Shown: positions 1,004 to 62,250 of the stretch, one piece after another
How the letters are laid out: each line of letters begins with the position of its first letter
How positions within the stretch are numbered: position 1 is the stretch's first letter
Virus record (IMG/VR): IMGVR_UViG_3300042895_001344
Span: 62,001 to 126,000 of that record
DNA length: 64,000 bases
Direction: 5' to 3' (one strand)
Program-made: the position numbers and the translations under genes
Notes under the pieces: generated by a model
What the model was told of the DNA's origin: nothing
The model's input: the letters and a program-made list of their open reading frames with translations, nothing else
Database searches by the model: none

Positions 1004-1011
1004 TATAAATA
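1004..1011 (-). promoter_or_regulatory. TATTTATA candidate late promoter
   Basis: 21 nt upstream of ATG 982; the motif recurs before many structural genes. Confidence 0.55.
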
Positions 1012-1080
1012 CTTAATTTTTACCAATCTTCGAGTTATTTCTATCTATTTGTAATATATTTTTATTATTAATTTGTTTTT

Positions 1081-4000
1081 TTAAAAACCACCTAAATCCA
1101 ATACAATATTATTTTGTTCTTGTGTTATTACGTTTTGTCCTCCCATTGATATTGAAGCAGAGATAATTTGTGATTGAATTTGAGCTTGCATCATTGCCAT
1201 TGCACCTGATATAATAAGTGATTCTCTTAATGGATCAGTTGATGTTAATGTTGTTGTTCCACGTACTGTTAAATCTCCATCAATAATAACTGAACCTGTT
1301 GTACGTAATGAACCTGTAAAATCATGTTTATCATCTAATGTATCACCGAACTTTGTTGACCCTGATTGATAAAGTATTGAAGATGTTACATAATCAATAC
1401 GTAATTCTTTTGCTGTGATTGTACCATCAATTACTACATCTGTATTAACTTTTAATTTTCCATCAGCTAATGATGCACTTACACTACCACTAACAATTCT
1501 ATCTAAGTTAAGTCCTGTAATTCCTGATGATGGGATATTATATAATCCTGCACCATCACCTGTAAATGAACCGCTAATTGTTCCGTTATTTACAGTTAAA
1601 TCACCTGTGTTAATTTCTAAATCACTATTTGTTAAATCAACAAGACCATTGAAAACATGTAAATTAGATCCACTTGTTAAATACAATGATGAACTGTCGG
1701 TCATTATTGTATTACTATCGGTAATTCCTAATTGAGATGTAATATTTAACGATCCCGTTATTTCTACATCATTTGTTGTCGTCCATGTGCCAGGTGTTGT
1801 TTCGGCAAATAAACTATCTCCGCTAGATCCTGATGTTCCACTTGTTCCCGATGTTCCACTTGTTCCTGATGTACCTGCAGTTCCTGATGAACCTGAAGTT
1901 CCGCTTGTTCCAGCCGAACCCGATGAACCACTAGTACCTGATGAACCATTACCACCGACAGTAGCAATTACTGTACCTGTTTGAGCCTCGTTAAAATATA
2001 CTTTTAAGTTATTACTATCAATAACTTCAATCTCTGTTGGGATTACTACTTTATCACTTGCATCAAATACGTTAATTGCAGGATATTTGTATCCTAAATT
2101 GTGATTGAATGACCATGTTGTTGAAGCTGAGGATACATTTAATGTTTTAGTTTGACCTGAAACAATAACTGCGTTTTCTGCATATATCGCGTATGATGAT
2201 GTTCCTGCAAATTGTGATGTATTTGAACCTGTATATGTGTTAAACGCCGATTCATCTAATTTACCGGTACCAATTGCTTGTCCGTTTAATGTTATTGAAC
2301 CTGTTATATTAACTGAACCCGTAAAATTATGTGTATCGTCTAAAGTATCTCCGAATTTGGTGGAACCTGATGTATATAAAACTGAAGAGGTTACATAATC
2401 AATGTGTAATTCTTTCGCGGTCAAAATACCATCAACATATAATGATCCTGTAATTGATGTATTGGTGTTAATATGTAAACCATCTAAATCAATAGATGCT
2501 GTATTACTACCACTACTAATTAAATTTAATTGTAAACCTGTAACTCCTGATGCTGGTATGTTAATTAAATTACTACCATCACCATAAATGTAAGCTCCAC
2601 TTATTATTCCACCGTCAACATATATGTTTGAACCACTCGTCATGTATAATGACGAACTATCTGTCATTATAATATTAGCATCAACAACTCCTAATTGGGA
2701 AGTTATTGATAATGATCCAGTAATTTCTACGTCATTTGTTGTTGCCCAAACGCTACCCGTTAGAGCAAATAAACTATCCCCTGAAGTACCATCCGAACCT
2801 GAAGAACCCGATGTACCTGAAGTACCACTTGTACCTGAAGTTCCGTCTGAACCACTAGTTCCTGAAGTACCACTTGTACCATCAGAACCACTAGATCCTG
2901 AAGTACCACTTGTACCATCGCTACCTGAAGAACCTGATGTACCCGCACTACCACTTGTACCTGACGTACCATCACTACCTGAAGTACCCGCAGTTCCTGA
3001 AGAACCATCTGAACCCGATGTACCCGCAGTTCCTGAAGAACCACTAGTTCCTGATGAACCGTCTGAACCTGAAGTACCACTAGATCCGTTTGATCCTGAT
3101 GAACCACTAGTTCCTGATGAACCATCTGTACCGTCAACACCTGATATACCCGAAGTACCATCACTACCTGAAGAACCGCTAGTACCACTAGATCCGTTCG
3201 AACCTGAAGAACCACTAGTTCCTGATGTACCATCAGAACCACTAGATCCTGAAGTACCTGAAGATCCTGATGTACCATCACTACCACTAGAACCTGAAGA
3301 TCCATCTGAACCACTTGAACCTGAAGATCCTGAAGAACCTGAAGAACCATCCGATCCACTAGATCCTGAAGAACCTGAAGATCCTGATGTACCATCACTA
3401 CCACTAGATCCTGATGAACCTGATGTACCATCACTACCACTTGTTCCGGATGTCATTGCTGAGAAAGAAACTCCGTCTATTGAAAGACTACCACTTACAA
3501 TATTAACTGATCCTGATATAAAAACCGAACCCGTAAACTCGTGTGTGTCGTCCGATGTATTACCAAATTTATTTGAACCTGATGTGTAAAGAACTGATGA
3601 CGTTACATAATTAATATTTAATTGTTTTGCGGTTAATATACCATCAATATACGTGTCTCCATTAACCCTGAATGTTCCATCGGATTGAATAGACGCACTT
3701 ACCGAACCACTTACTATTTGATTTAGTGCTAAATTTGTTACACCACTTGCCGGTATATTATATAATCCCGCACCATCACCAAAGAAAGCTGCAGTAACAA
3801 AACCACCATTTTCAACAATGATATTACTACCACTTGTTAATATAAGTGATGAACTGTCAGTTAAAAATAAACTTGAATCAAATACACCTGAACCGTTGGA
3901 TACTATTAATGAACCCGTAATAGATGTGTTGGTGTTAATATTAAATCCATCTAAACTAACCGAAGCCGTATTACTACCACTTGTAATTTTATTTAATTCT

Positions 4001-6309
4001 AATCCTGTTACACCTGAAGCTGGAATATTATATAATCCCGCACCATCACCAAAGAAGGCGGCAGTAATGTAACCACCATTTTCTATAATGATATTACTAC
4101 CACTATTTAAAACCATTGAACTACTATCAGTCAAATACAAGAAAGAATTAACCGCATTAGTACCTTGACTAACAGTTAATGAACCTGTAATAGATGTATC
4201 AGTATTAATATTAAATCCATCTAAATTAATTGAAGCAGTATTACTACCACTTGTGATTTGATTTAACTGTAAACCTGTTACTCCTGATGCTGGAATATTA
4301 ATTAAGTTTGAACCGTCTCCGTAGATATAGGCTCCACTTATTATTCCTCCATCTACATATATGTTTGAACCACTAGTAAGATAAAGCGATGAACTATCCG
4401 TCATTATGATATTACTATCTGTAATACCTAATTGAGAAGTTATACTTAAACTACCTGTAATTTCAATATCATTTGTTGTTGCCCATACTGAACCAGTAAG
4501 TGCAAATAAACTATCCCCTGAAGAACCATCTGATCCACTTGAACCTGAAGATCCTGATGTACCATCACTACCACTAGAACCTGAAGAACCATCCGATCCA
4601 CTAGAACCTGAAGATCCTGAAGAACCTGAAGAACCATCTGAACCAGAAGAACCTGATGTACCATCACTACCACTAGAACCTGAAGAACCATCTGATCCAC
4701 TTGAACCTGAAGATCCTGATGTACCATCACTACCACTTGAACCTGAAGAACCATCTGTTCCGTCAATTCCTGATATTCCTGAAGAACCTGAAGAACCATC
4801 TGAACCACTTGTACCGCTAGATCCGTTAGAACCTGATGTACCATCTGAACCACTTGTTCCTGAACTACCATTACTACCACTTGTACCATCGGAACCTGAT
4901 GTTCCTGAAGTCATCGCTGAGAATGAAACTCCGTCTATTATTAAACTACCACTTGAAATATTAACTGAACCACTGATAAACAATGAACCCGTAAACTCGT
5001 GCGTATCATCCGATGTATTACCAAATTTATTTGAACCTGATGTATAAAGAATTGAGGAACTTACATAATCAATATTTAATTGTTTTGCGGTAATAATACC
5101 ATCAACATTTAACGAACCTGTAATCTGTACGTCATTTGTTGTTGCCCAAAAAGATCCTGTTTGTGCAAATAAACTATCTCCTGATGTACCATCAGAACCA
5201 CTTGTACCGCTAGATCCGTTAGAACCTGATGTACCATCAGAACCACTTGTACCTGATGTACCATCTGTTCCGTCAACTCCACTTATACCACTAGAACCTG
5301 AAGAACCGTCTGATCCGTTAGAACCTGATGTACCATCTGAACCACTTGTACCATCAGAACCTGATGTACCATCTGAACCACTAGTTCCACTTGTTCCTGC
5401 GGTTCCCGCTGAACCTGAACCTCCACCACTTGTTTGACCACCAATTAATGAACCTGTGGTATCACTAATCTTAATGTAAATTGGTAGTGGATTTGTTGCC
5501 GGTTTTACATTCGTTACATAAGATGTATTTGATGCAGTTGCATCGTAATATAATATATCACCAATTGAAAATCCTGTTAATGTTAATCCCCCTTTGATTT
5601 CACCAAATGGTTTAACTGCCATGTTTCCATCTTCAGGTTCATTTACTGACGTAACAATACCAAAAGATTTTTCAACTTGAGTTGCGTTTGTTGTGTCAAC
5701 TAATTGAAATGTTCCTGTTGAATCTAAATAAACTATTTGATTAACACTATAACCTGTATTATAAACTAAATTAGTATCGTTATTGTTGTAATATGTTGTT
5801 GTTAAATTTCTATATTGAAATTTTGCATACATGTCATTAACAAAATAGTTAATGTCAGGTAAATAAGGTTGTAACAATTGTAATCCACTTAATATTGGAT
5901 CTCCGTCATCGGATAAATAAAATAATAATCCGTTATTACCTTCGCTAGGGGTATTAAAACCACTAAATGAAGTGTCGGATAATATATTATATAAACCAAC
6001 ATCTTTTAAAACAACATCAATTTCCGTTGCACTTGTTGGTGTTGATGTACTTATAATTTTATAAGATGCGCCGTTACTACTTTGACCAAACCACATTCCT
6101 TCATTTACAAAATATGCATCATACATAAATTGATTTGGTGTAATTCTATCGTCAGAAGTGAGTGTTGCGGTTACTTGTAATGTACAATTAAATGTATATC
6201 CATATCCATGGTAAGTACTTCCAGTATTATTATAAAATGTACTAGTAGTAATACTACCAGGTTTTATATTAGCAACTAATGTAATTGGTAATGATTCTAA
6301 TCTTGCCAT
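1081..6309 (-). CDS. 1742-aa modular fibre protein (Gly-X-Y Ser/Thr tracts, duplicated shaft modules, HNLG domain)
   Basis: Four GSS/GTS tracts; four copies of AK(Q/E)LxIxYVxSSxLYxSGSxKFGxTxDDxHxFTGS; five GDGxxLxNIPxSGxTxL modules; C-terminal DLGGF. Confidence 0.8.
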   Translation of the reverse strand: MARLESLPITLVANIKPGSITTSTFYNNTGSTYHGYGYTFNCTLQVTATLTSDDRITPNQFMYDAYFVNEGMWFGQSSNGASYKIISTSTPTSATEIDVVLKDVGLYNILSDTSFSGFNTPSEGNNGLLFYLSDDGDPILSGLQLLQPYLPDINYFVNDMYAKFQYRNLTTTYYNNNDTNLVYNTGYSVNQIVYLDSTGTFQLVDTTNATQVEKSFGIVTSVNEPEDGNMAVKPFGEIKGGLTLTGFSIGDILYYDATASNTSYVTNVKPATNPLPIYIKISDTTGSLIGGQTSGGGSGSAGTAGTSGTSGSDGTSGSDGTSGSDGTSGSNGSDGSSGSSGISGVDGTDGTSGTSGSDGTSGSNGSSGTSGSDGTSGDSLFAQTGSFWATTNDVQITGSLNVDGIITAKQLNIDYVSSSILYTSGSNKFGNTSDDTHEFTGSLFISGSVNISSGSLIIDGVSFSAMTSGTSGSDGTSGSNGSSGTSGSDGTSGSNGSSGTSGSDGSSGSSGISGIDGTDGSSGSSGSDGTSGSSGSSGSDGSSGSSGSDGTSGSSGSDGSSGSSGSSGSSGSDGSSGSSGSDGTSGSSGSSGSDGSSGDSLFALTGSVWATTNDIEITGSLSITSQLGITDSNIIMTDSSSLYLTSGSNIYVDGGIISGAYIYGDGSNLINIPASGVTGLQLNQITSGSNTASINLDGFNINTDTSITGSLTVSQGTNAVNSFLYLTDSSSMVLNSGSNIIIENGGYITAAFFGDGAGLYNIPASGVTGLELNKITSGSNTASVSLDGFNINTNTSITGSLIVSNGSGVFDSSLFLTDSSSLILTSGSNIIVENGGFVTAAFFGDGAGLYNIPASGVTNLALNQIVSGSVSASIQSDGTFRVNGDTYIDGILTAKQLNINYVTSSVLYTSGSNKFGNTSDDTHEFTGSVFISGSVNIVSGSLSIDGVSFSAMTSGTSGSDGTSGSSGSSGSDGTSGSSGSSGSSGSDGSSGSSGSSGSSGSDGSSGSSGSDGTSGSSGTSGSSGSDGTSGTSGSSGSNGSSGTSGSSGSDGTSGISGVDGTDGSSGTSGSSGSNGSSGTSGSDGSSGTSGSSGTAGTSGSDGSSGTAGTSGSDGTSGTSGSAGTSGSSGSDGTSGTSGSSGSDGTSGTSGTSGSDGTSGTSGTSGTSGSSGSDGTSGDSLFALTGSVWATTNDVEITGSLSITSQLGVVDANIIMTDSSSLYMTSGSNIYVDGGIISGAYIYGDGSNLINIPASGVTGLQLNLISSGSNTASIDLDGLHINTNTSITGSLYVDGILTAKELHIDYVTSSVLYTSGSTKFGDTLDDTHNFTGSVNITGSITLNGQAIGTGKLDESAFNTYTGSNTSQFAGTSSYAIYAENAVIVSGQTKTLNVSSASTTWSFNHNLGYKYPAINVFDASDKVVIPTEIEVIDSNNLKVYFNEAQTGTVIATVGGNGSSGTSGSSGSAGTSGTSGSSGTAGTSGTSGTSGTSGTSGSSGDSLFAETTPGTWTTTNDVEITGSLNITSQLGITDSNTIMTDSSSLYLTSGSNLHVFNGLVDLTNSDLEINTGDLTVNNGTISGSFTGDGAGLYNIPSSGITGLNLDRIVSGSVSASLADGKLKVNTDVVIDGTITAKELRIDYVTSSILYQSGSTKFGDTLDDKHDFTGSLRTTGSVIIDGDLTVRGTTTLTSTDPLRESLIISGAMAMMQAQIQSQIISASISMGGQNVITQEQNNIVLDLGGF
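2780..3450 (-). repeat. Longest Gly-X-Y (GSS/GTS/GSD) coding repeat tract, ~220 aa
   Basis: Glycine at every third residue; similar tracts at ~1820-1950, 4518-4910, 5180-5430, 6715-7150, 7560-7860. Confidence 0.9.
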
Positions 6310-6311: not shown

Positions 6312-8012
6312 TTATATATAAATATTATTTGTAGGTACTTGCCATGTTATGTATTGTACTACCGCACCCGTACCATATATACCAGTAAATCCTGTTCCTA
6401 ATGCCTTAAATGTCATTAAGGTTTTTGCTGCGTTTTGTACACAGACTGATTGGCCAGTTGATGTTCCTCCCATATTTCTACTTAAGAAATCTCCACCAAT
6501 AAGTTGTGAATGTGTCATAAAATTTATTCCCCATAGTCCTAATGGATGTGTTACACTTATTTCAGTTGCACTAACTCTTGTAAATGTCCAACCACCAGTA
6601 CCTGATGTTATAGTATTACCTAGTGGGTCGGTTGCCGCAGCAAAAGGACTCGCATCTAAACTACCTGCCGAATATGTTAATTTTAAAACATACACACCTC
6701 CACCACCCGCCGCCGATGTACCTGAAGAACCTGATGTACCCGATGTTCCCGTTGCACCACTTGTACCTGATGAACCCGCAGCACCTGAAGTACCACTAGA
6801 ACCATCAACACCTGATGTTCCCGATGATCCAGCAATACCTGAAGATCCACTAGATCCTGAAGTTCCCGAAGAACCTGTCGTTCCTGAACTACCATCTGAA
6901 CCACTTGTTCCTGAGGTACCCGATGAAAAACCTAAAGGTGATGTACCCGATGAACCTGAAGTTCCCGCACTACCTGATGTACCGTGTGAACCAGTTGCAC
7001 CCGTTGTACCCGATGTTCCACTTGAACCTGACGTTCCTGAAGTACCACTAGTTCCTGAAGTTCCGTCTGAACCTGATGTTCCACCACTTCCCGCAATACC
7101 TGATGTTCCACTTGATCCTGAAGAACCTGATGTACCACTTGTACCATTTGTACCTCCACCACCGCCACCAACTATAGTCACTCTAACATTACCCGCACCA
7201 ATATCTGTAACGGTTGCACCACTAAATATGATTTTATCTACTCCATTAATTAATGTTGATCCGTCACCGACTTTAAGTGTTGATGTTCCTCCTCCTTCTC
7301 CTCCACTTATTGAACTATATAAATTAATGGACCAACTATTGTGATCACTACCTCCTACATGTTCTAAAATTCTTATTATTAATTGTGTACCTGAATAACT
7401 TACAACACGTCCTATTAAATAATTTAATATATTACTTGCAGCAATTACAAGTTGACCCGTGGTATAAGATAAATTACTATCAACTGTGAAAGTAAGGTCT
7501 TCCCCATCGTGTTCGTCAATATCTGTAATGTATGTTGTTGATGATGTTTGATAAACATTTCCTGAAGTGCCTGATGTACCTGAAGTACCTCTTGCTCCCG
7601 ATGTACCCGAAGAACCACTTGTACCGTGATTACCCGCAATACCGCTTGTTCCTGAAGAACCACTAGATCCGTTTGATCCTGACGTTCCACTTATACCTGA
7701 AGATCCTGATGTTCCCGAAGTTCCTGAAGAACCTGTTAAACCTGAAGAACCACTTGTACCAGATGTACCACTAGTACCTCTTGCACCTGAAGATCCTGAA
7801 GATCCTGAAGATCCTGAAGTACCTGACAAACCTGAAGAACCTGATGTACCTGAAGATCCTGTGGTTAAATCAGTTAAACTTGTTCCTGAAACATATAAAT
7901 TATCTGCGTAGACCGCATTTAATGGAGTTGTGGATGAACCGAGATCAATTGTGGTACCTGGTGTGACGTTTTCCGTCTCAATCTGTGTCCAATTTATTCT
8001 TTGTAGTGCCAT
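6312..8012 (-). CDS. 566-aa fibre-like protein with two Gly-X-Y Ser/Thr tracts and a C-terminal globular (putative receptor-binding) domain
   Basis: GTSGSS tracts; beta-rich, Thr-rich flanks; adjacent to other fibre genes. Confidence 0.75.
   Translation of the reverse strand: MALQRINWTQIETENVTPGTTIDLGSSTTPLNAVYADNLYVSGTSLTDLTTGSSGTSGSSGLSGTSGSSGSSGSSGARGTSGTSGTSGSSGLTGSSGTSGTSGSSGISGTSGSNGSSGSSGTSGIAGNHGTSGSSGTSGARGTSGTSGTSGNVYQTSSTTYITDIDEHDGEDLTFTVDSNLSYTTGQLVIAASNILNYLIGRVVSYSGTQLIIRILEHVGGSDHNSWSINLYSSISGGEGGGTSTLKVGDGSTLINGVDKIIFSGATVTDIGAGNVRVTIVGGGGGGTNGTSGTSGSSGSSGTSGIAGSGGTSGSDGTSGTSGTSGTSGSSGTSGTTGATGSHGTSGSAGTSGSSGTSPLGFSSGTSGTSGSDGSSGTTGSSGTSGSSGSSGIAGSSGTSGVDGSSGTSGAAGSSGTSGATGTSGTSGSSGTSAAGGGGVYVLKLTYSAGSLDASPFAAATDPLGNTITSGTGGWTFTRVSATEISVTHPLGLWGINFMTHSQLIGGDFLSRNMGGTSTGQSVCVQNAAKTLMTFKALGTGFTGIYGTGAVVQYITWQVPTNNIYI
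6317..6324 (-). promoter_or_regulatory. TATTTATA candidate late promoter embedded in the last codons of the upstream gene
   Basis: 7 nt before ATG 6309. Confidence 0.5.
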
Positions 8013-8061
8013 GTAAAAGTAAAGTCTTTTACATAAATACTTTTATTCCACTAATAGGCAT

Positions 8062-9774: not shown

Positions 9775-10110
9775 TTAATTAAGACAAATTGAACCGAAAT
9801 TGGAGAATTCAATAAACACCCCATTATCGTAATCAAAGTCTTCTTTTTTAAATTGTATTCCGTTTTTAAATTTTGTTTTATTAATGACACTAATCGCCGC
9901 AATTGTTTTTCTTAATAATTCAAATTGTTCTCTGTCCAATGTTGCTGTTCCATTTTTTTCATAGTTCTTCTGTGCAATCTCAGTCATATGTTTGTAAAAC
10001 AATTCTTCATCTGAATTACTTAAAAAAAATTCTTTTGCTTCTAAATTGGTTTCAAAGTAATTTTTAACCGATTGAAGATATATTAAAACTTCAGGCGATA
10101 ATTTATCCAT
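9775..10110 (-). CDS. Hypothetical protein
   Basis: 111-aa ORF coupled to nusG. Confidence 0.7.
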   Translation of the reverse strand: MDKLSPEVLIYLQSVKNYFETNLEAKEFFLSNSDEELFYKHMTEIAQKNYEKNGTATLDREQFELLRKTIAAISVINKTKFKNGIQFKKEDFDYDNGVFIEFSNFGSICLN

Positions 10111-10634
10111 TAAGGTTTCTGTATTTGGTCCAAAGTTAACGAAACTGCAGTATTTCTTCCAAATATTTTTATTTCTACGTCAACACGATCACCTTTTACT
10201 TCTTTAATAATACCACTAAATTCTTTGAATGGTCCTTCACATACTATAATAGATTCTCCAGTATCAAATTTTAATTTTTTACTTTCAATATGTTCTTCTA
10301 ACGTATCATCTTTCAATATACGTCTAACGTCAGTATCTTTTAATAACATTGGCATCCTATCACCCATCATACCCATAATATTAGGTATTAAAGATATTAC
10401 CTTCAAATCATCATTTTCTAATTGTTTAAGAGATTCAAAATAAAGATATCCACTATATAATACTTTTTCTCTAATAACTTTTTTATTTTTAACTACAACG
10501 AATTCTTTCTCAGTAGGACAAACAAATCTTACAATTTTATTTATTCTACCTAAACCAATATCTTTATTGAATTGTTCAGTTAATGATCTTTCTTTACCGG
10601 GTAAAACTTTTACCACGTACCATGCTGTATTCAT
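10110..10634 (-). CDS. nusG: Transcription elongation/antitermination factor NusG
   Basis: NGN domain WYVVKVLPGKE...LYSGYLY; KOW domain GPFKEFSGIIKEV...IKIFGRNTAV. Confidence 0.92.
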   Translation of the reverse strand: MNTAWYVVKVLPGKERSLTEQFNKDIGLGRINKIVRFVCPTEKEFVVVKNKKVIREKVLYSGYLYFESLKQLENDDLKVISLIPNIMGMMGDRMPMLLKDTDVRRILKDDTLEEHIESKKLKFDTGESIIVCEGPFKEFSGIIKEVKGDRVDVEIKIFGRNTAVSLTLDQIQKP

Positions 10635-11653: not shown

Positions 11654-11725
11654 TAATCATTTATTTATATCAAAAAATATAACCAAAATATTTGATAAAG
11701 AGAAATTTAAAGTATATATTTTATT

Positions 11726-15411: not shown

Positions 15412-16257
15412 CTATATAAATATATCTTTAATCTCATTTAATACGATATTTTCCACTTGTTTACGTGGTAAACCGTATGTTTTTGAGATTTCGTTTATTA
15501 TTTGTTGTATTTCTTTGTCTTCATTAACGTATTCAATTGCTCCCGTATTACCTTGATTACAATAAGGAAACTTCTTACATTTCTCTTTTACCTTAACAAA
15601 AACACTATCTGGTCCTCCCCATTTAGGGAAATTCTTATCCTTGACCGCTCTACCTTTATAGATACTGTCAGGTCCGTCAATCTTCAATGGGTCTTTACGA
15701 CCACCAGAGGTTGATTTACCGAACGCAGGGACATCAAATGCACCTGAAGAACTTGAATCTGTTACTTCCCCTAATTCTTGTTCGTTTGGTTCAAAATTAG
15801 GTATTTTAGATATTTTTCTTTTAATCACATCTCCATCTCCACCAAACGCCGATCCTTCAAAAGAACCTGACGAATCTGCACCTGTTTCTTTTACTTCTTC
15901 TTTCTTTTTTGTCATATCCACGACCCACAATTTGGGGTTAATACCTTTACCAATTAAACCAGCAAGTCTTGTATTACCACCTAAAAGGTCATAATCGTTC
16001 TCACCAAATTTAACTACCATTGGTATTTCAACTTCACCCTCTTTAAAATGCTTTTCAAATCTTTTTTTCTTTTCATCCTCAAGTGTATCATAATCTAAAT
16101 CCACATTATTCAATACTTCTTTAATTGAATTAAAATTAGAAATTTCAAAATCTTTAGATGCTTTCTCTAACCACTTGTCCTTACCCATCTTTTCAAATTC
16201 ACGGTAACGAAGAGCCTCACTCCACTCATGTTCAAAGTTTGGTTTAGAATACTTCAT
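15412..16257 (-). CDS. Hypothetical protein with N-terminal ParB/Srx-like domain
   Basis: IPMVVK...YDLLGGNTRLAG resembles the ParB-N GxxR motif; C-terminal KKFPYCNQG. Confidence 0.55.
   Translation of the reverse strand: MKYSKPNFEHEWSEALRYREFEKMGKDKWLEKASKDFEISNFNSIKEVLNNVDLDYDTLEDEKKKRFEKHFKEGEVEIPMVVKFGENDYDLLGGNTRLAGLIGKGINPKLWVVDMTKKKEEVKETGADSSGSFEGSAFGGDGDVIKRKISKIPNFEPNEQELGEVTDSSSSGAFDVPAFGKSTSGGRKDPLKIDGPDSIYKGRAVKDKNFPKWGGPDSVFVKVKEKCKKFPYCNQGNTGAIEYVNEDKEIQQIINEISKTYGLPRKQVENIVLNEIKDIFI
15415..15422 (-). promoter_or_regulatory. TATTTATA candidate late promoter
   Basis: 5 nt before ATG 15409, inside the last codons of the upstream gene. Confidence 0.5.
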
Positions 16258-17024: not shown

Positions 17025-17610
17025 TGTTAAAAAAAACCCCAAAGTTAAAGGAAGGGTTTATATCTGTATAAATACTTGAAAAATTGGATTTACATACTAT
17101 CCCTGTGAAATTTGAAGCATTTTCCAAGTATCCGTGGGATGGTACCACTTGTTTAGTTATTTTATGTTTATCACACAACTCATTACAAAGTTCAGAAAGG
17201 GATTTTAATTGGGTTTCGGAGTATACGTCCCAAAAATAATAGTTCCTCCAATTACGGATATGTGGTTCACCTCTGTATGGGTCTCCAATCCAATTATAAA
17301 GGACACCAGTGATGGTATCTTTGTTCAACCATCCTAAGTTCTCGACGGCTATTTTGATCTGTTTTTTGTCTATCTGAGGGTCATTAAATGTATTGGAACT
17401 ATGGTCGGTATCAAACAGTTGATAAACTACACCTAATTTAGATATAACATAATGAGGGACATCTTCATATTTCCCATTTAGACGATATTTCATTTTACTT
17501 AAAAAATCATCTAATCTTCTTTGGGTGTCGTATAGGAATATTTGCGTCTTCTTAGACTTTCTACGAGTAATATTTAAATTATCTAAAATTTCTACGTCTT
17601 GAACTAACAT
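17008..17610 (-). CDS. N-acetylmuramoyl-L-alanine amidase (Amidase_2)-like protein, Zn ligands degenerate
   Basis: PHYVISKLGVVYQL, IAVENLG, YSETQLKSLSELCNELC, TDINP; HxT replaced by YDT and GH by CK. Confidence 0.65.
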   Translation of the reverse strand: MLVQDVEILDNLNITRRKSKKTQIFLYDTQRRLDDFLSKMKYRLNGKYEDVPHYVISKLGVVYQLFDTDHSSNTFNDPQIDKKQIKIAVENLGWLNKDTITGVLYNWIGDPYRGEPHIRNWRNYYFWDVYSETQLKSLSELCNELCDKHKITKQVVPSHGYLENASNFTGIVCKSNFSSIYTDINPSFNFGVFFNNANEN

Positions 17611-19011: not shown

Positions 19012-19301
19012 TTAGATTCTTGTTCTTTTTTTAAGTTTTCTTTAACAATAAAATGTAGTTCCATTAACTGTGGCCCTCTATCTTTTTGTGTGATCCAATT
19101 ATCATAAAAACCGTGAATTGCTATTTTTTCATTTTTATGTGTTGTTTTAAGACTATCAATCGTAGATACGTTTTGTTTTTGAATTTTTTCTAATTTAGTC
19201 ACTCTACTTGAATTGCTACAAGACTTAAAAAAGAAGATGACTGTTAAAAAAATCAGTACCTGTAATTTATATGTTTTTATTAATTCGATTAACTTTTTCA
19301 T
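19008..19301 (-). CDS. Membrane-anchored/lipoprotein-like protein
   Basis: N-terminal TM followed by FKSCSN; TATTTATA at 19315-19322. Confidence 0.65.
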   Translation of the reverse strand: MKKLIELIKTYKLQVLIFLTVIFFFKSCSNSSRVTKLEKIQKQNVSTIDSLKTTHKNEKIAIHGFYDNWITQKDRGPQLMELHFIVKENLKKEQESK

Positions 19302-19313: not shown

Positions 19314-20123
19314 TTATAAATAGTTTAATAGACCAAAACTCTCGTTTCTAAGCTTTTTAATGGCCTTATCACGTAATTGTCTAATACGTTCTTTTGTACA
19401 ACCGTATTCCTCCCCCAAGTCCTCTAAGTTTGATTCAACACCTGTTAGACCATAATATCTCTCAATAATAACTCTTTCTCTTTCATCTAAGACACTTAAC
19501 ATTGCTGAAACTTTTTTCTTTATTTCTTCAGGTGAGTTCATAATAGCATCAGGTCTTTCCGCTTCTTTGTTTGGAATAATATCAATTAGTTGATCTCCGT
19601 CTTCGTTTATTTCTCTATATAGACCAACACAGTATGGTAGACCACTTGACACCGGTTCTTCACTATTATTAATAAAGAAATTATCTTCTTGACTTAATTC
19701 TTCTTTTTTAGATTTCTGTGATTCTTGAACCAAATTTGACGGAAGACGTATAGTTCTTGCGTTTTCATTTAATGATGCCATTATTGATTGTCTAACCCAC
19801 CACACAGCGTATGATATAAATTTTAATCCACTTGTTGGATCAAATCTTTCCGCCGCCTTCATTAAACCAATATTACCTTCGGATATGATGTCCATAATAT
19901 CCATCCCTTGATTTTGAAACATTTTTGCAACTGATATAACAAATCTTAAATTACCTACAACCAACTCATCGTATAAAAATTTCTTTTCATGTTTAGTAAT
20001 TGTCTTATCATTAAGTCTTTCAAAAATAACCTCTTGTCTTTCATGTGATATAACAGGTATTCTACGAATGTCCTTTATGTACTGTTGTATTTCCTCGGTG
20101 TTGTTTAAGATGGATTTTTTCAT
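19314..20123 (-). CDS. RNA polymerase sigma-70 family factor (Bacteroidota RpoD-like)
   Basis: NLRFVISVAK, EGNIGLMKAAERFD, KFISYAVWWVRQ, region-4 HTH TKERIRQLRDKAIKKLR. Confidence 0.93.
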   Translation of the reverse strand: MKKSILNNTEEIQQYIKDIRRIPVISHERQEVIFERLNDKTITKHEKKFLYDELVVGNLRFVISVAKMFQNQGMDIMDIISEGNIGLMKAAERFDPTSGLKFISYAVWWVRQSIMASLNENARTIRLPSNLVQESQKSKKEELSQEDNFFINNSEEPVSSGLPYCVGLYREINEDGDQLIDIIPNKEAERPDAIMNSPEEIKKKVSAMLSVLDERERVIIERYYGLTGVESNLEDLGEEYGCTKERIRQLRDKAIKKLRNESFGLLNYL

Positions 20124-21968: not shown

Positions 21969-21995
21969 ATTATATGTTTTATTATAAATATGAAG

Positions 21996-22699: not shown

Positions 22700-22716
22700 A
22701 AATTTAGTTTATAGGA

Positions 22717-22724: not shown

Positions 22725-22740
22725 ATTAAGATATTCGAAA

Positions 22741-31048: not shown

Positions 31049-31084
31049 AAAAAAAAATGGGAGCCGGACACCACGCCGACTCCC
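31049..31084 (-). terminator. Strong intrinsic terminator
   Basis: 9-bp GC stem with one G-U pair on the minus strand, followed by A and T9. Confidence 0.8.
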
Positions 31085-31120
31085 TCCAACCAAACTTGTA
31101 TTTCTACAAGTCCCGTCCTA
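31049..31120 (-). ncRNA. Candidate ~75-nt structured small RNA (GAAA-tetraloop hairpin plus terminator hairpin)
   Basis: GC-rich island: ACUUGUA-GAAA-UACAAGU and GGGAGUCGG-N8-CCGGCUCCC-A-U9; preceded by TATTTATA at 31122-31129. Confidence 0.5.
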
Positions 31121-31173
31121 ATATAAATATATCTTTTACAGCTCGTAAAGTAAAACTTTAGTTGCCGAATATT

Positions 31174-33936: not shown

Positions 33937-33961
33937 ATGTTATAAATATCTTTATTTTATT

Positions 33962-47393: not shown

Positions 47394-50300
47394 TTAAGGA
47401 ACTTGGTTTTCACATTCAAGTAAATTAAATGCCCCTTTAGGACCAAATAAATCTACAAACTTATCCATTCCCGTTTTACCCGCCATCAGTCCAAAATAAA
47501 AATGAAATGGTGTCGAAAGGATTTGTCTATTTCCACTGTAATAATCAATTGTTGGTCTTATGATATAATCAATTGAACTACTCCAAAATTGTGAGTGCCA
47601 ACCATTTGTTATTGTAATACCTTGATATGTTGAGTTACCAGATACTGGACCAACTCTAGTATATAATGTTCCACCTGTTGGTGCCTTAGTATATTGTCCC
47701 GACCCTCCAGATAATAATTGATTTGTAAACCCTGTTACGTGTAAATAAGTAAAACCAGGATATTCTAAACCATAGTCCTCGCTACTATCAAAAGGATTTT
47801 CATCAAGATCAACAATATCAAAATCAATTTGATCTGTACCATCTCCATTTATTGTTAAACCACTAAAAGTATAAGTCATTGGTAATAACAAATATTTGTC
47901 TGACGAATCATTTGGTGCTCCATTAATATTATAAGCGTATGTCATTCCTTGTAAAGGTTGTAATTCAACAGAACTATAATCCCAAGATTGACTATCTTTA
48001 TATTCATTGTATGGACCAAATCCCGTACCTCCCTTATCCCACAAATAAAACGGTACTTTTTGTGAAGATCCATAAGTATCTGAATCCCAACCCAATCTTC
48101 CCGGCTCATTTAAACATGCTCTAATTCTTTCACCATCTTCTTTGAGATCGAAAGTAACCGGTAATGGTCCATATTGTGAGTTTCCGTTTTTAAAAACTTC
48201 AGGATAAATCTCAGGATCTAACTTATTGAATTGATATGCAAGATATTTTGAATTTTCTAAATCAAATCCTTCTATACCGGCTTCATTATTAATAGATAAT
48301 AATTGTAGAATATCTCCATCTAAAATTTGTCTTAGACCTATTTTATTTTGAAATCCTTTGTTGGTAAAAAACATATCTAAATTTCCGAGAGCTCCTCCGA
48401 CATCCATTCTATAATTAATTGCTAATCCAAGTAAATCTCCAATGTCTTGATATGAGGTAGGTCCAATACTTCTTGATACAGAACAATTTGGATCTAATCT
48501 TTTATCAATACATATTTCTTTAATAAATTCATCTCTTGGTCCTAAATCTACAAATGTCGTAGGGTGATTTAATTCATTAGGTATAAAATTACCATTTTTA
48601 AATTTAGCTGATCTATAATAAAATTTATTAATTCCGTTACCTACGAATCTTACTAATGTCCTACAATATCTTATTAATTTTTCATTATTACTACTTATAG
48701 CTCTAGTAACTCCTTTAGCTTTAAATTGTAAAAAATATAGTGATCCAGATAACCAGTTATCAATAAAACCATAATTAACGACTCCACCACAAAACATTTT
48801 ACCCACTCGTTTTCTTCTATAATATTCCCTCAATATACCTGATAATCTTGCTGGAGTTTGAGTACCTGGAATGATATAAAAAACTCCGTTTGCAAACTCA
48901 CTTCTTGCACTTGGGGTTGCATATCCTCCATTATAATTCCAATCTTCACAACTGAAATCTCTAATACCTGATACGAATGGATTACCTGATTGATATGGAT
49001 AATATGATTCAGGTACATTTTTTTCTCCACCATAAATTGCTGTAGAGATTAATATATTACCTGCACTTAATTCTGTTTTTAATTGTGCATTAGTTTGAAC
49101 ATATTTTCTTCCTATATTTTCTGGTAAAAGTGTAGCATTATAACCGCAACCCTTAAATTCACTCGTATTACTATTATTCGTAACAAAATACCCTGTCACC
49201 AAATTATCATCATATAATGTATCGTAATAACCACAACTACTATTTCCACTATAAGATATACCAGAACCATTTCCACCGCCAATAGTGGAACTTTCATCTG
49301 AACATTCGACGCATTCAGGATAATTAATTAAACTTAATTTTGTTTGATTATTAATAACAAATTCTGTAAGTCTTGACCTTAAACCTCTATTCCTTTTTGC
49401 CGAAATAGTAATTAATGCTTCAACTATGGTATTTAAAATAAAAATTGTAAAATTTAAAAATTGTAATGTTAAAAATTTAATAACAAAATCCAACACTAAT
49501 AAAAAATCGGCAATTAATAATGGAAATGTATAATTCTTTATACCAAAATTTGATGGTGGTGTTAGTTTATCTCCACAATCTTCTTCTTCACTTGGAATTG
49601 TGTCATTTATATTAGCGAAACCGACTTGTCCAATTAAATTTGTACCGTTATATCTCTGTTGAAATGACGATACTGTATAGACTTTATTATATGTGAATCT
49701 GTAAAAATAATCTTGTGGATAATATTCGCCTCCATCATTATTTAAAATTAATGGTAAAGCCTCAGATGGATAATCACTTAGACTTGTTGAGAACGCGTAT
49801 GATTTATCATTTGGAACATCATAAGAAAATCCACCTAACGTTTCGGTTAATTGATACTCTCTTATGTTTGGTAACAAATAATCAGCATTAAATCTAACTC
49901 TCGTTAAATCATTATCATTCATGTTAATTCTAAATCTATAACATCCTGATGTTGGAATACCTCTATTAATATCATTAGTTATTTCATTCTCACCAAATTC
50001 ATTTGTAATTACATAGTCCATGTTCATGATAACCGGTAATACAAATCCACCGTCATCGGGTATGTCCTCATTTATATTAACAACTTCTAAACGTGGGTAA
50101 TTGTTATCATCTTTTTGAGGTGTAAATCTAATAGCCTCAATCTTACCTGACTTAGCAACTAAATCACATTTTCTTCCCATTTTTCTTCTTGGGGTACAAG
50201 CTTTATTAATTGCATTTTTACTACTGTCAGTAAAAATACCACCAATTACATATGCTTTAGGTTGAATATTAACTCCGTTTTCTGTTAAGTCAAAATCTGT

Positions 50301-51011
50301 TCTTGTAATACCAATCTCACATAAAGATTCATTTCCCCAAAAAGGATAAACTTGGATGATTTTATTTATACTAACAATTTGTGGTAAAGAGTCTAAATCT
50401 TCAGATTCTTTAAATGAGAATTTGTTTTTAAATCCATCGACATTTATTCCTTGTCTAATAAAATCATATGGTCTTAAAGAGAAACAACCGACATCAGATA
50501 AGTCAGCATCCATATGTATTGTTTGTGCACCAATAGGTACACCCCAAATCATAAAATCACCCGCACTATTTGTTTTAACTGTGTATTTGTAATATTTCTC
50601 ATATACCTCTAAAACTTCTTCTCTCTCTAAAATATTAGTTTGATCGGGAAACGTCCCCGTTTTTGCATGTCCACTATGTTGTTGTCTTGATGGTAATAAG
50701 TTATAACGATAATTATTTTCGTCTCTGTCAGTAACTTCCTTATATGGGTAAAGAGTAGAAATTACAGGATCCTTTTCATCTTCTATTGTTAATGGTACAA
50801 ATATTGATACTCTTACATTACCAAGTCCAAAACCATTGTTTGCAGTAACTCTACCACAGACAACTCCGTAATCAGAGCACATCGAAGTGTAAATCTCTTT
50901 TTGACTGAATTTTAAAGATAAAATCTCTAAAACGTCAAAATCTTGTTTTAACTCAACTGTAATTTTTTGGTCAACCCCAATATTGGTCGAAATTCTATGC
51001 TTTTGTATCAT
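47394..51011 (-). CDS. 1205-aa putative baseplate-associated protein with an N-terminal carboxypeptidase-regulatory/CnaB-like domain
   Basis: VCGRV...NVRVSIF...TNSAGDFMIWGVPIG; Cys-rich; internal hydrophobic segment. Confidence 0.65.
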   Translation of the reverse strand: MIQKHRISTNIGVDQKITVELKQDFDVLEILSLKFSQKEIYTSMCSDYGVVCGRVTANNGFGLGNVRVSIFVPLTIEDEKDPVISTLYPYKEVTDRDENNYRYNLLPSRQQHSGHAKTGTFPDQTNILEREEVLEVYEKYYKYTVKTNSAGDFMIWGVPIGAQTIHMDADLSDVGCFSLRPYDFIRQGINVDGFKNKFSFKESEDLDSLPQIVSINKIIQVYPFWGNESLCEIGITRTDFDLTENGVNIQPKAYVIGGIFTDSSKNAINKACTPRRKMGRKCDLVAKSGKIEAIRFTPQKDDNNYPRLEVVNINEDIPDDGGFVLPVIMNMDYVITNEFGENEITNDINRGIPTSGCYRFRINMNDNDLTRVRFNADYLLPNIREYQLTETLGGFSYDVPNDKSYAFSTSLSDYPSEALPLILNNDGGEYYPQDYFYRFTYNKVYTVSSFQQRYNGTNLIGQVGFANINDTIPSEEEDCGDKLTPPSNFGIKNYTFPLLIADFLLVLDFVIKFLTLQFLNFTIFILNTIVEALITISAKRNRGLRSRLTEFVINNQTKLSLINYPECVECSDESSTIGGGNGSGISYSGNSSCGYYDTLYDDNLVTGYFVTNNSNTSEFKGCGYNATLLPENIGRKYVQTNAQLKTELSAGNILISTAIYGGEKNVPESYYPYQSGNPFVSGIRDFSCEDWNYNGGYATPSARSEFANGVFYIIPGTQTPARLSGILREYYRRKRVGKMFCGGVVNYGFIDNWLSGSLYFLQFKAKGVTRAISSNNEKLIRYCRTLVRFVGNGINKFYYRSAKFKNGNFIPNELNHPTTFVDLGPRDEFIKEICIDKRLDPNCSVSRSIGPTSYQDIGDLLGLAINYRMDVGGALGNLDMFFTNKGFQNKIGLRQILDGDILQLLSINNEAGIEGFDLENSKYLAYQFNKLDPEIYPEVFKNGNSQYGPLPVTFDLKEDGERIRACLNEPGRLGWDSDTYGSSQKVPFYLWDKGGTGFGPYNEYKDSQSWDYSSVELQPLQGMTYAYNINGAPNDSSDKYLLLPMTYTFSGLTINGDGTDQIDFDIVDLDENPFDSSEDYGLEYPGFTYLHVTGFTNQLLSGGSGQYTKAPTGGTLYTRVGPVSGNSTYQGITITNGWHSQFWSSSIDYIIRPTIDYYSGNRQILSTPFHFYFGLMAGKTGMDKFVDLFGPKGAFNLLECENQVP

Positions 51012-51066
51012 TCTTATAATAAATAGAAACTATGTGATTTTCTATATATTATAACGAAAAAACATT

Positions 51067-52897: not shown

Positions 52898-53350
52898 TTA
52901 TATGTTTAAAATTATAAAGTCGGAAGTTGAAAATGACCCGTTATTAACTGTATATTCTATTTTAACTACCGCCGTATATGGTTTTGTCGATTCATCAGAA
53001 ACCCTAAATAATCTTTCATCTTCATCTTGTGCGATACTTCTTTGTCGATTTGGATCGTCTTCCGCTGATGTTATAGATATATTTGTAATATCTAAGTTTG
53101 GTATGAATTTTTTAACTCCTTCTCTGATTTCTTCTTCAATTAAATTATATGTAATTGCGTCATTTTGATCGAAAATGTATTGATATATTCTTGTTCCAAA
53201 ATCAGGTAAGTAATATCTACTACCTTTTCTTGTTAAAATAAGGTGTATAAGATTGGCTCTAATCTCCTTTTCAGGGATTTCAGTCATATTAAGATAATCT
53301 CCTTTGGGGCTATCTCTAAATGGATAATCAATACCGTACGTTACTGCCAT
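52898..53350 (-). CDS. Baseplate wedge subunit (gp25/GPW-like)
   Basis: IRANLIHLILTRKGSRYYLPDFGTRI; start MAVTY at 53350. Confidence 0.88.
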   Translation of the reverse strand: MAVTYGIDYPFRDSPKGDYLNMTEIPEKEIRANLIHLILTRKGSRYYLPDFGTRIYQYIFDQNDAITYNLIEEEIREGVKKFIPNLDITNISITSAEDDPNRQRSIAQDEDERLFRVSDESTKPYTAVVKIEYTVNNGSFSTSDFIILNI

Positions 53351-53380
53351 ATTCAATAAATATAGATAAACCTAAAATGG

Positions 53381-59766: not shown

Positions 59767-59774
59767 GTTAATAA

Positions 59775-60967: not shown

Positions 60968-61339
60968 TTATTCTAATGTTAATAGATATGTTATTTTATT
61001 TAATAGTCCTAAAATCTCATCACGGATATTCAATAAATCCGTATCTGTTGAATCAAACTCACTACTCCATTGGATTAACGCCTCTTTAGATGTTTGTAAC
61101 ATGTTCTTTAAATCCAATTCAGATAAATTTACAACGTTTAATGTTTTATCTTCATTTTCTAATTTAAATCTACCGTACTTACCCATCGCGGCCTCAGCAA
61201 ACGTGTCTGTCAAATCAACTAATCCTTCATATAACTTGTCAAAGGCTTTATGTCTTGCGTAACCTTTGGTTTGCCAATGGTTAATTTTAACTTGAGCCTG
61301 AAGTTCCATTAAGAACTTTATTTTAGAAGCTATATTCAT
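60968..61339 (-). CDS. Ferritin/Dps-like four-helix protein (DUF5856-like)
   Basis: HWQTKGYARHKAFDKLYE...DTFAE di-iron-type motif. Confidence 0.75.
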   Translation of the reverse strand: MNIASKIKFLMELQAQVKINHWQTKGYARHKAFDKLYEGLVDLTDTFAEAAMGKYGRFKLENEDKTLNVVNLSELDLKNMLQTSKEALIQWSSEFDSTDTDLLNIRDEILGLLNKITYLLTLE

Positions 61340-62000: not shown

Positions 62001-62003
62001 GGC

Positions 62004-62207
62004 TTAATCTTGTAATAATTGTCTACCGTCATTGGTAATATATCTTTTGTTTATTCTTTCAACGATACCGTCTTTTTCTCTGATTGTATAACATTCTCCT
62101 GTTACTAAATCACATTCTTCTCTTTCCATACCATCATTAGATACGTTTTTAACCTTTTTAGGGTTTAAAAACTGATCCATGGTATTATTTAATCTATTAT
62201 TTTCCAT
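62004..62207 (-). CDS. Small hypothetical protein
   Basis: Start MENNRL at 62207, after TATTTATA at 62225-62232; ECDLVTGEC. Confidence 0.7.
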   Translation of the reverse strand: MENNRLNNTMDQFLNPKKVKNVSNDGMEREECDLVTGECYTIREKDGIVERINKRYITNDGRQLLQD

Positions 62208-62250
62208 AATATTTGTTTTATTACTATAAATATCCCAAGTTTTATTAATA

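What the first reader, a model, noticed from the sequence alone, without database searches (positions are those of the whole stretch)
1004..62232. TATTTATA box before structural genes: the exact reverse complement of the T4 late promoter
Seen: coding-strand TATTTAT(A) lies 4-21 nt upstream of start codons at 1004, 6317, 8033, 15415, 19315, 21983, 33941, 35287, 35939, 42255, 51019, 53356 and 62225. It also occurs at 17067 (42 nt upstream) and before the candidate sRNA (31122). It appears on the + strand (11662) ahead of the only + strand genes. It is absent immediately upstream of ssb, uvsX, helicase, nrdJ, clpP, sigma and ruvC. In three cases it is embedded in the last codons of the previous gene (NIYI, DIFI, NYL). 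Known: the T4 gp55 late promoter is TATAAATA on the non-template strand. Inference: a distinct late-promoter class with very short leaders, read by a phage sigma-like factor.
Basis: partly seen in the sequence, partly recalled or inferred. Interest (0 to 1): 0.6.

Follow-up and report, generated by a model that had tools for sequence, protein, structure and literature searches.

The report
Phage late-gene promoter box TATTTATA
A short DNA word, TATTTATA, sits just in front of the virus-particle genes of a giant freshwater phage and most likely acts as their late on-switch, read by a phage protein distantly related to the T4 late sigma factor gp55, so it is a new variant of a known control system.

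Summary
TATTTAT(A) lies on the coding strand 4-21 nt before 13 start codons, at the stated coordinates. The octamer is not over-represented overall (17 found, 16.4 expected). The signal is in its position and strand.

The window is part of a phage contig of at least 217 kb from lake water. In that contig, 31 of 63 copies lie sense-oriented within 40 nt upstream of a gene, a zone covering 2% of positions (p about 1e-35). A composition-matched model expects 3.5.

Every box-bearing gene with a recognisable function is a virion or packaging gene. No replication gene carries the box. There is no -35 element. Boxes often follow terminators, and one drives a small hairpin-terminator RNA.

The box is also enriched in the cultured Flavobacterium phage immuto and in Microcystis phage Mel-JY01. 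All three phages share a 233-aa sigma-like protein, encoded outside the window. Its closest solved structure is T4 gp55.

Best reading: a single-box late promoter of the T4 type with altered specificity. "Reverse complement of T4" is true but mostly reflects the near-palindromy of the T4 box. In the same orientation the two boxes differ at 2 of 8 bases. No transcript data exist.

The parts
1004..1011 (-). TATTTATA box, 21 nt before the ATG of a tail-fibre gene (2-982; 1203 aa in the full record)
6317..6324 (-). TATTTATA box, 7 nt before the ATG of the 1742-aa tail-fibre gene (1081-6309). It overlaps the last codons (NIYI*) of the previous gene.
8032..8039 (-). TATTTATG variant, 19 nt before the ATG of the 566-aa tail-fibre gene (6312-8012). 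A hairpin (8082-8070) and T-run lie upstream.
15415..15422 (-). TATTTATA box, 5 nt before the ATG of a 415-aa gene (14162-15409). It is embedded in the DIFI* end of the previous gene.
17067..17074 (-). TATTTATA, 42 nt before the ATG at 17024, with a hairpin and T-run between. Function doubtful.
19315..19322 (-). TATTTATA box, 13 nt before the ATG of a 97-aa gene (19008-19301). It overlaps NYL* and the stop codon of the sigma70-family gene.
21983..21990 (-). TATTTATA box, 14 nt before the ATG of a 111-aa gene (21633-21968). It lies directly after the hairpin 22014-21999 and a T-rich tail.
31122..31129 (-). TATTTATA box with no ORF behind it. It precedes the small-RNA candidate.
31050..31121 (-). 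Small-RNA candidate of about 66 nt. It has a 7-bp hairpin with a GAAA loop, then an intrinsic terminator (31084-31059) and T9. Two base pairs show compensatory changes in relatives. The true ATG of the primase gene is at 31021.
   Evidence: no Rfam match
33941..33948 (-). TATTTATA box, 4 nt before the ATG of a 704-aa gene (31822-33936). Predicted leaderless.
   Evidence: conserved in L029 and L031
35287..35294 (-). TATTTATA box, 5 nt before the ATG of the 439-aa Cys-rich gene (33962-35281). It lies 16 nt after the terminator 35342-35317.
   Evidence: conserved in L031
35939..35946 (-). TATTTATA box, 16 nt before the ATG of a 185-aa gene (35365-35922)
   Evidence: conserved in L031
42255..42262 (-). 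TATTTATA box, 10 nt before the ATG of a 303-aa gene (41333-42244), which heads an operon with the 1787-aa gene
51018..51025 (-). TATTTATT variant, 6 nt before the ATG of the 1205-aa gene (47394-51011), which heads a four-gene block
53355..53362 (-). TATTTATT variant, 4 nt before the ATG of the gp25-like baseplate gene (52898-53350). The gp6-like wedge gene follows.
62225..62232 (-). TATTTATA box, 17 nt before the ATG of a 67-aa gene (62004-62207)
11662..11669 (+). TATTTATA on the plus strand in the divergent intergenic region. It is 56 nt before a 46-aa ORF and 193 nt before the 212-aa ORF. Possible promoter of the only plus-strand genes; weak.
19314..20123 (-). Sigma70-family sigma gene (regions 2 and 4). 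It is the alternative, less likely reader of the box and has no box upstream.

Best explanation
TATTTAT(A) is the -10-like core of the phage's late promoters. It is a single A/T box without a -35 element. It directs the host RNA polymerase core, loaded with a phage-encoded sigma, to the virion and packaging genes. The most likely sigma is a 233-aa two-domain protein encoded outside the window (G001:169460-170161). Its N-terminal domain is closest to T4 gp55. Where the box lies 3-7 nt from the ATG, the transcripts should be leaderless or nearly so, which suits a Shine-Dalgarno-poor, probably Bacteroidota, host. Elsewhere the leaders are short, A-rich and 10-40 nt long.

Shown here: the position, strand, gene-class, terminator and conservation statistics, and the sequence and fold similarity of the sigma-like protein. 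Inferred: that transcription starts there, that it is late, and which sigma reads the box.
For: Position and strand:
- 31 of 63 copies lie in the 2% upstream zone (p 2.5e-35). The reverse orientation gives 6 of 63.
- A Markov model matched to the upstream zones expects 3.5; 31 were observed.

Architecture:
- There is no information upstream of the box except non-T at -1. There is no -35 element.

Gene class:
- In the window, 4 of 6 recognisable structural genes carry the box and 0 of 18 DNA or transcription genes do (Fisher p 0.0014).
- Outside the window the box precedes the large terminase, portal and adaptor genes, and the tail sheath and tube genes.

Promoter context:
- A terminator lies 0-21 nt upstream of 8 of 45 box sites, against 5 of 173 other genes (p 0.001). 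In phage immuto the figures are 5 of 29 against 8 of 201 (p 0.014).
- 7 of 12 divergent intergenic regions carry a correctly oriented box.
- The box at 31122 precedes a hairpin-terminator unit with no ORF and two compensatory pair changes.

Conservation:
- Flavobacterium phage immuto (baseplate protein 27.6% identical) has 23 of 45 copies in the upstream zone (p 1e-23). There the box precedes the annotated terminase, portal, tail sheath, tube, baseplate hub, tape measure and tail spike genes.
- Microcystis phage Mel-JY01 has 9 of 63 copies there (p 5e-5). Its boxes sit 20-45 nt from the ATG with GGAG/GAGG in between. That is what a promoter would show, and not what a translation signal would show.

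- The 233-aa ORF matches the T4 gp55 family (phrog_234, E 5e-6). BLASTP against gp55 gives E 2e-6. Its best PDB sequence hit is gp55 7d7c_F (E 9e-4).
- The AlphaFold2 model has pLDDT 92.9. Its best match among 48,161 chains is gp55 7d7d_F (Z 10.7, 118 residues), followed by 30 sigma factors.
- Homologues occur in immuto (E 5e-20) and Mel-JY01. Both lack any Sigma70_r2 or Sigma70_r4 gene.
- In 7 of 9 divergent contigs encoding this family, the next gene downstream carries TATTTAT 3-21 nt upstream. One is a 52.5%-GC contig where that is the only copy in 9.9 kb.
Against: - No RNA data exist. All 24 sequencing runs that hold the phage are DNA.
- Ten of 45 spacers are only 3-4 nt. The T4 box is separated from +1 by 5 nt (PMC2988020).
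- No gp33 or gp45 homologue was detected.
- The similarity to gp55 is remote (19-22% identity). A family profile hits SigA region 2 (E 0.003) slightly better than gp55 (E 0.045).
- The C-terminal half looks like sigma region 4, yet no -35 element is seen.
- LR756508, L070 and L075 carry distant family members without the exact box.
- The closest relative (95% identical) is too similar to show selective conservation: 0 of 189 box positions changed against 18 of 1063 flanking positions (p 0.09).
Confidence: 0.75

Rival explanations
1. The box is a promoter, but it is read by another factor. Candidates are the sigma70-family sigma encoded in the window (19314-20123), a modified host primary sigma, or an unrecognised phage protein. 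On this view the gp55-like protein does something else.
For: - The window encodes a bona fide sigma with regions 2 and 4.
- The box overlaps that gene's stop codon.
- The link between the gp55-like protein and the box rests only on co-occurrence.
Against: - Immuto and Mel-JY01 have the box but no Sigma70_r2 or Sigma70_r4 gene.
- The box is shared by phages whose hosts belong to different phyla (Bacteroidota and Cyanobacteria). That argues against a host sigma.
- The box does not match the Bacteroidota TAnnTTTG element, and there is no -35 element.
Confidence: 0.13
2. The word acts at the RNA level. It would be an endonuclease processing site that frees downstream cistrons, or an AU-rich translation enhancer in front of highly expressed genes.
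For: - It is orientation-specific and lies just upstream of start codons, sometimes inside the preceding gene.
- Spacers of 3-4 nt are awkward for a promoter.
- The small RNA could be cut out of the ruvC 3' UTR.
- Primer-extension-type data on T4 late promoters have the same ambiguity between initiation and processing (PMC2988020).
Against: - The spacing to the ATG varies from 3 to 40 nt, and is 20-45 nt with a separate Shine-Dalgarno sequence in Mel-JY01. That does not fit a ribosome-positioning element.
- Boxes are enriched right after intrinsic terminators and in divergent regions, where no upstream co-oriented transcript is expected.
- One copy precedes a non-coding unit.
- The box co-occurs with a sigma-like protein family.
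Confidence: 0.1
3. The pattern is a compositional artefact of AT-rich gene junctions.
For: The genome is 68% AT and the upstream zones are 78% AT. The total count of the octamer equals the shuffle expectation.
Against: - The box occurs nine times more often than a Markov model of the upstream zones predicts.
- It is the top-ranked of all 8-mers in the upstream zone.
- The other 55 octamers of the same composition fall in the zone at 4.9%, against 49% for the box.
- Its reverse complement sits at expectation.
- The box is conserved in a 52.5%-GC contig.
Confidence: 0.02

Closest known systems
Phage T4 late promoters (TATAAATA at -13 to -6) read by gp55, with gp33 and the gp45 sliding clamp
   Same: - A single 8-bp A/T box at the -10 position with no -35 element.
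- AT-rich sequence downstream of the box.
- Placement in front of virion genes on either strand, often inside the end of the preceding gene.
- A phage sigma whose N-terminal domain is the best structural match to gp55 (Z 10.7).
- The positions that gp55 flips into deep pockets, A(-12) and A(-8) (PMC7892883), are A in both boxes. The stacking residue Y97 is nearly invariant in the new family.
   Different: - The two central bases are T-T instead of A-A (positions -10 and -9). TATAAATA itself is not enriched here (6 observed, 5.3 expected).
- The residues of the gp55 -9 pocket (N13, H95) are replaced in the alignments. This rests on low-identity alignments and is only suggestive.
- The sigma is 233 aa with an extra sigma4-like C-terminal domain, against 185 aa for gp55.
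- No gp33 or gp45 homologue was found.
- Many boxes lie 3-7 nt from the ATG.
In-silico late-promoter consensus of other T4-related phages (KVP40, 44RR, S-PM2, Aeh1; reviewed in PMC2988020)
   Same: These are also variant boxes inferred from positional enrichment upstream of structural genes in phages that carry gp55 homologues.
   Different: Those consensus sequences keep the central AAA. Aeh1 varies only at -13 and -12. Here the centre changes, and the phages lie outside the recognised T4 family: the structural proteins have no PHROG match and gp55 similarity is only just detectable.
Bacteroidota primary-sigma promoters (TTTG at -33, TAnnTTTG at -7; from my own knowledge of the literature)
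   Same: Probably the same host group. A few TATATTTG boxes occur before non-structural genes and before the tRNA cluster.
   Different: TATTTATA lacks the TTTG core and has no -33 partner. TAnnTTTG is only weakly enriched (p 0.004) and marks different genes.

Membership tests
T4-type late transcription system | Promoter is a single -10-like A/T box with no conserved -35 element | tested here: met
   Position-by-position counts of 45 aligned sites show no information upstream except non-T at -1.
T4-type late transcription system | Box sequence TATAAATA on the non-template strand | tested here: not met
   The box is TATTTATA, which shares 6 of 8 positions in the same orientation. TATAAATA occurs upstream of genes at the background rate (6 observed, 5.3 expected; 6 of 63).
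T4-type late transcription system | Phage encodes a gp55 homologue (a late factor with a sigma region 2) | tested here: met
   A 233-aa ORF outside the window matches phrog_234 (E 5e-6). BLASTP against gp55 gives E 2e-6. The top PDB sequence hit is 7d7c_F and the top structural hit is 7d7d_F (Z 10.7). The similarity is remote, and the profile search also hits SigA region 2.
T4-type late transcription system | gp33 co-activator present | tested here: inconclusive
   phrog_254 found nothing in G001, G002, immuto or Mel-JY01. It also rang in none of the control genomes, so the search has little power. A conserved ~120-aa gene next to the sigma-like gene shows no similarity to gp33.
T4-type late transcription system | gp45-type sliding clamp that activates late transcription | tested here: inconclusive
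   phrog_223 found nothing. G001 is only about 65% complete. The immuto and Mel-JY01 records are complete and are also negative.
T4-type late transcription system | Transcripts start about 6 nt downstream of the box, late in infection and dependent on replication | not testable with these tools
   No RNA runs hold this phage.
Canonical sigma70 promoters (-35 and -10) | Two hexamers 16-18 bp apart | tested here: not met
   There is no -35 signal. Sigma70-type consensus matches are at the shuffle level: 80 found, 84 expected.
Bacteroidota primary-sigma promoters | TAnnTTTG -7 box with a TTTG -33 box | tested here: not met
   The motif lacks TTTG. TAnnTTTG is weakly enriched (p 0.004) and overlaps only 5 of the 46 genes that carry the TATTTAT box.

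The most novel reading that the evidence does not exclude
A large, unnamed family of two-domain sigma factors directs late transcription from a TATTTATA box without gp33 or a phage clamp. The family has at least 1,284 clusters at 50% identity, an N-terminal domain closest to T4 gp55 and a sigma4-like C-terminal domain. It occurs in a wide clade of myoviruses and megaphages that infect Bacteroidota and cyanobacteria. In the Bacteroidota phages the system gives largely leaderless late mRNAs, and it also drives a small RNA.
Probability: 0.45. Interest if true: 0.65.

Novelty: new variant of a known kind. Interest (0 to 1): 0.5.

Why it matters
- It gives a directly testable promoter-and-sigma pair for a large group of environmental phages. 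This includes a megaphage of roughly 330 kb whose structural genes have no database matches.
- The test system is cultured: phage immuto on Flavobacterium sp. LMO8.
- The box can be used to mark late, and so probably virion, genes among unannotated ORFs in such genomes.
- Comparing gp55 (TATAAATA) with this family (TATTTATA) offers a natural specificity swap at the two central positions. That could help work out how minimal sigma factors read the non-template strand.
- The short spacers suggest leaderless late mRNAs in a host group that hardly uses Shine-Dalgarno sequences.

Tried and rejected
- DNA and protein searches of the phage collection with the window and with the 439-aa protein found nothing.
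- Most box-bearing proteins have no PHROG or Pfam match, so their structural role is inferred from neighbours and from immuto orthologues.
- Public runs: 24 holders, all lake-water or freshwater DNA metagenomes kept as contigs, and no RNA. Read laying was therefore not used, because contigs cannot show transcript starts.
- Rfam found no family in the window.
- The 95%-identical relative G002 is too close to show selective conservation of the box (p 0.09).
- The box is shared by five reciprocal-best-hit orthologue pairs between this phage and immuto: terminase, portal, sheath, tube and PhoH. The overall association is not significant (p 0.10), because operon boundaries differ.
- TAnnTTTG host-type boxes are weakly enriched here (p 0.004) and not at all in immuto.
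- phrog_12791 (another late-sigma family), gp33 and gp45 gave no hits.
- phrog_234 did not detect the Mel-JY01 and LR756508 homologues.
- LR756508 shows no enrichment in its first 240 kb.
- Foldseek against the PDB gave only weak E-values (best 9e-3), although almost all hits were sigma factors. The exhaustive aligner was needed to rank gp55 first.
- The TATTTAT upstream of the tRNA cluster in G001 is better explained by an overlapping host-type TTTG-N19-TATCTTTG promoter, so it was not counted.
- No alternative genetic code was needed.
Full report
WHAT THE WINDOW IS

Almost all genes lie on the minus strand. The window is the reverse strand of a 69,970-bp virus record. That record is a 100%-identical piece of a 217,142-bp IMG/VR contig, G001. 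CheckV rates G001 as 65% complete, so the real genome is roughly 330 kb.

The sequence occurs in many lake-water metagenomes, none of them RNA. GC content is 32%.

Recognisable genes in the window:
- Tail fibres, and gp25-like and gp6-like baseplate proteins.
- A ClpP-like prohead protease.
- Ribonucleotide reductase, DnaB, primase, UvsX, SSB, RuvC, SbcCD, exonucleases and methyltransferases.
- A NusG-like protein, a DksA-like protein, and a sigma70-family sigma with regions 2 and 4.

Most large proteins between 31.8 and 51 kb have no family match.

THE OBSERVATION

The spacers are 4-21 nt. The three boxes embedded in the last codons of the preceding gene are as described.

The octamer is not over-represented as such: 17 copies against 16.4 expected. 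What is non-random is where it lies and which way it points.
- In the 70-kb record, 12 of 15 coding-strand copies end within 30 nt of a start codon. That zone is 3.4% of the sequence, and no other 8-mer occurs there more often.
- In the 217-kb contig, with my own simple ORF calls, 31 of 63 copies (both strands) lie sense-oriented within 40 nt upstream of a start. That zone is 2% of strand positions (binomial p 2.5e-35).
- The other 55 octamers of identical composition lie there in 4.9% of cases. The reverse orientation, which is the T4 word TATAAATA, does so in 6 of 63 cases.
- A first-order Markov model trained on the upstream zones themselves (78% AT) expects 3.5 +/- 1.9 copies; 31 were observed. 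TATAAATA gives 6 observed against 5.3 expected.

ANATOMY

Forty-five genes of the 217-kb contig carry TATTTAT within 48 nt of the start. When these sites are aligned, nothing is conserved upstream except non-T at -1. Position 8 is mostly A. There is no -35-like element.

Nineteen spacers are 3-7 nt and the rest are 10-40 nt.

Genes without the box have only A-rich leaders (AAATAAAA and similar). No Shine-Dalgarno word appears among the enriched words.

WHICH GENES CARRY THE BOX

In the window, 4 of 6 recognisable structural genes carry the box. None of 18 replication, nucleotide or transcription genes does (Fisher p 0.0014).

Elsewhere in the contig the box precedes:
- the large terminase (5 nt, directly after a terminator), the portal (4 nt) and a head-tail adaptor-like gene;
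- the orthologues of the immuto tail sheath and tube.

PROMOTER OR RNA SIGNAL?

Four features favour transcription initiation.
1. A hairpin and T-run lies 0-21 nt upstream of 8 of 45 box sites, against 5 of 173 other genes (p 0.001). The same holds in phage immuto: 5 of 29 against 8 of 201 (p 0.014).
2. Seven of 12 divergent intergenic regions, where a promoter must exist, carry a box pointing at the gene.
3. The box at 31129-31122 is followed by no ORF. Instead there is a 7-bp GAAA hairpin and a strong intrinsic terminator (31084-31059 plus T9). The true primase ATG follows 109 nt after the start of the box. In two diverged relatives one pair in each stem has changed on both sides (U-A to C-G and G-C to A-U), while the box is invariant.
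4. In Microcystis phage Mel-JY01 the box sits 20-45 nt from the ATG with GGAG or GAGG in between. The box therefore keeps no fixed distance to the start codon and coexists with a separate ribosome-binding site.

A processing site cannot be fully excluded without 5'-end chemistry.

RELATIVES

The nearest cultured relative is Flavobacterium phage vB_FspM_immuto (160 kb), whose baseplate wedge protein is 27.6% identical. Next come Microcystis phage Mel-JY01 and the uncultured 484-kb phage LR756508.
- An unbiased 8-mer test on immuto again puts TATTTATA among the top three words (23 of 45 in the upstream zone, p 1e-23).
- The immuto genes behind the box are annotated as terminase, gp20-type portal, tail sheath, tail tube, baseplate hub, tape measure, tail spike, tail fibre and virion structural protein.
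- Mel-JY01 shows a weaker enrichment: TATTTATA 9 of 63 (p 5e-5) and ATATTTAT 14 of 90 (p 2e-7).
- The first 240 kb of LR756508 show none.
- Close relatives in metagenomes keep the boxes at orthologous places. They are too similar for that to count as independent evidence.

WHO READS THE BOX

The sigma70-family gene in the window has no counterpart in immuto or Mel-JY01: neither has a Sigma70_r2 or Sigma70_r4 match.

A second candidate lies outside the 70-kb record at G001:169460-170161. It is a 233-aa ORF.
- It matches the PHROG family of T4 gp55 (E 5e-6; E 1e-4 as the best family in a direct scan).
- It aligns to gp55 by BLASTP (E 2e-6).
- gp55 is its best hit among all PDB sequences (E 9e-4; the next hit is at E 0.1).
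- It is homologous to immuto gp118 (E 5e-20), to a Mel-JY01 protein and to an LR756508 ORF.
- The family is large: 1,284 representatives at 50% identity with E up to 0.001.
- A 66-sequence profile hits only sigma factors in the PDB: SigA region 2 at E 0.003-0.012, gp55 at 0.045 and an ECF sigma at 0.11.
- The AlphaFold2 model is confident (pLDDT 92.9).
- In an exhaustive structural comparison with 48,161 chains the best match is gp55 (7d7d_F, Z 10.7, 118 of 137 residues, 19% identity). Thirty further sigma factors follow. The C-terminal half aligns to sigma region 4 of full-length sigmas.

Nine divergent contigs encode a family member: this phage, immuto and seven metagenomic contigs with 27-52% GC. 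In seven of them the next gene downstream has TATTTAT 3-21 nt before its ATG. That gene is a conserved ~120-aa ORF. In the 52.5%-GC contig this is the only copy of the word in 9.9 kb.

This co-occurrence is the main link between the protein and the box. It is correlative.

COMPARISON WITH T4

T4 late promoters are an 8-bp TATA box at -13 to -6 with no -35 element (PMC2988020). gp55 recognises the non-template strand by flipping A(-12), A(-9) and A(-8) into pockets (PMC7892883).

Read in the same orientation, TATTTATA and TATAAATA differ only at -10 and -9. The word is the exact reverse complement of the T4 box only because the T4 box is nearly self-complementary. A(-12) and A(-8) are kept.

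In the alignments, Y97, which stacks on A(-12), is nearly invariant in the new family. The -9 pocket residues N13 and H95 are replaced. This is suggestive only, given about 20% identity.

No gp33 or gp45 homologue was found in any of the four genomes. Those searches have little power. I therefore file this as working like a T4 late promoter and as a variant of that kind, not as a member of the gp55-gp33-gp45 system.

SHORT LEADERS

With the T4 geometry (5 nt between the box and +1), spacers of 3-7 nt put the start at or next to the A of the ATG. That means leaderless or near-leaderless mRNAs. This is inference.

It fits the absence of Shine-Dalgarno words and the contrast with Mel-JY01. The 3-4-nt spacers remain unexplained.

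VERDICT

I found no paper describing this box or this sigma family in the searchable library. A review notes only that T4-like jumbo phages encode minimal and RpoD-like sigmas (PMC7824862).

Novelty: new variant of a known kind. Interest is moderate.

Noticed in passing
window 31050-31121 (- strand): A small-RNA candidate of about 66 nt lies between ruvC and the primase gene. It has a GAAA hairpin and an intrinsic terminator. One pair in each stem changes compensatorily in relatives L029 and L031. There is no Rfam match. The primase start is the ATG at 31021, not the TTG at 31093.
   Followed up: partly
G001:C1:169460-170161 (L015:9460-10161), outside the window: A 233-aa gp55-like, two-domain sigma belongs to a family with 1,284 representatives at 50% identity. 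It forms a conserved gene triad in divergent contigs: sigma-like gene, then a ~120-aa gene, then a ~600-aa gene.
   Followed up: partly
window 33962-35281 (- strand): This 439-aa Cys-rich protein is 39-91% identical among relatives whose neighbouring genes are about 95% identical. It is a hypervariable, modular virion protein, possibly for host recognition.
   Followed up: no
whole record; G000 3' end (outside the window): The 69,970-bp record is a fragment. It ends inside a 30-nt tandem repeat of a tail-fibre gene. It is contained in a 217-kb contig rated 65% complete, so the phage is a megaphage of about 330 kb.
   Followed up: yes
window about 22700-22740; L017:14767-14797; G1r intergenic regions: A few TATATTTG/TAnnTTTG boxes (the Bacteroidota -7 type) occur before non-structural genes, before the ClpP-like protease gene and before a five-tRNA cluster. 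Enrichment is weak (p 0.004). This hints at a Bacteroidota host and at host-type early promoters.
   Followed up: partly
phage immuto NC_055915 (L034-L041): Two other words are strongly enriched upstream of immuto genes: TATATTTAG(GTA) and TCAATAATTAAAA. They may mark further promoter classes or a conserved leader.
   Followed up: no
window 10110-10634, 60968-61339 and 19314-20123: Besides the sigma70-family sigma, the phage encodes a NusG-like (KOW) protein and a DksA-like protein. This is an unusually rich set of transcription factors that act on the host polymerase.
   Followed up: no
window 17022-17074 (- strand): The box at 17067 is followed by a hairpin and T8 before the next ATG at 17024. 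This may be an attenuator or a second tiny transcript.
   Followed up: no
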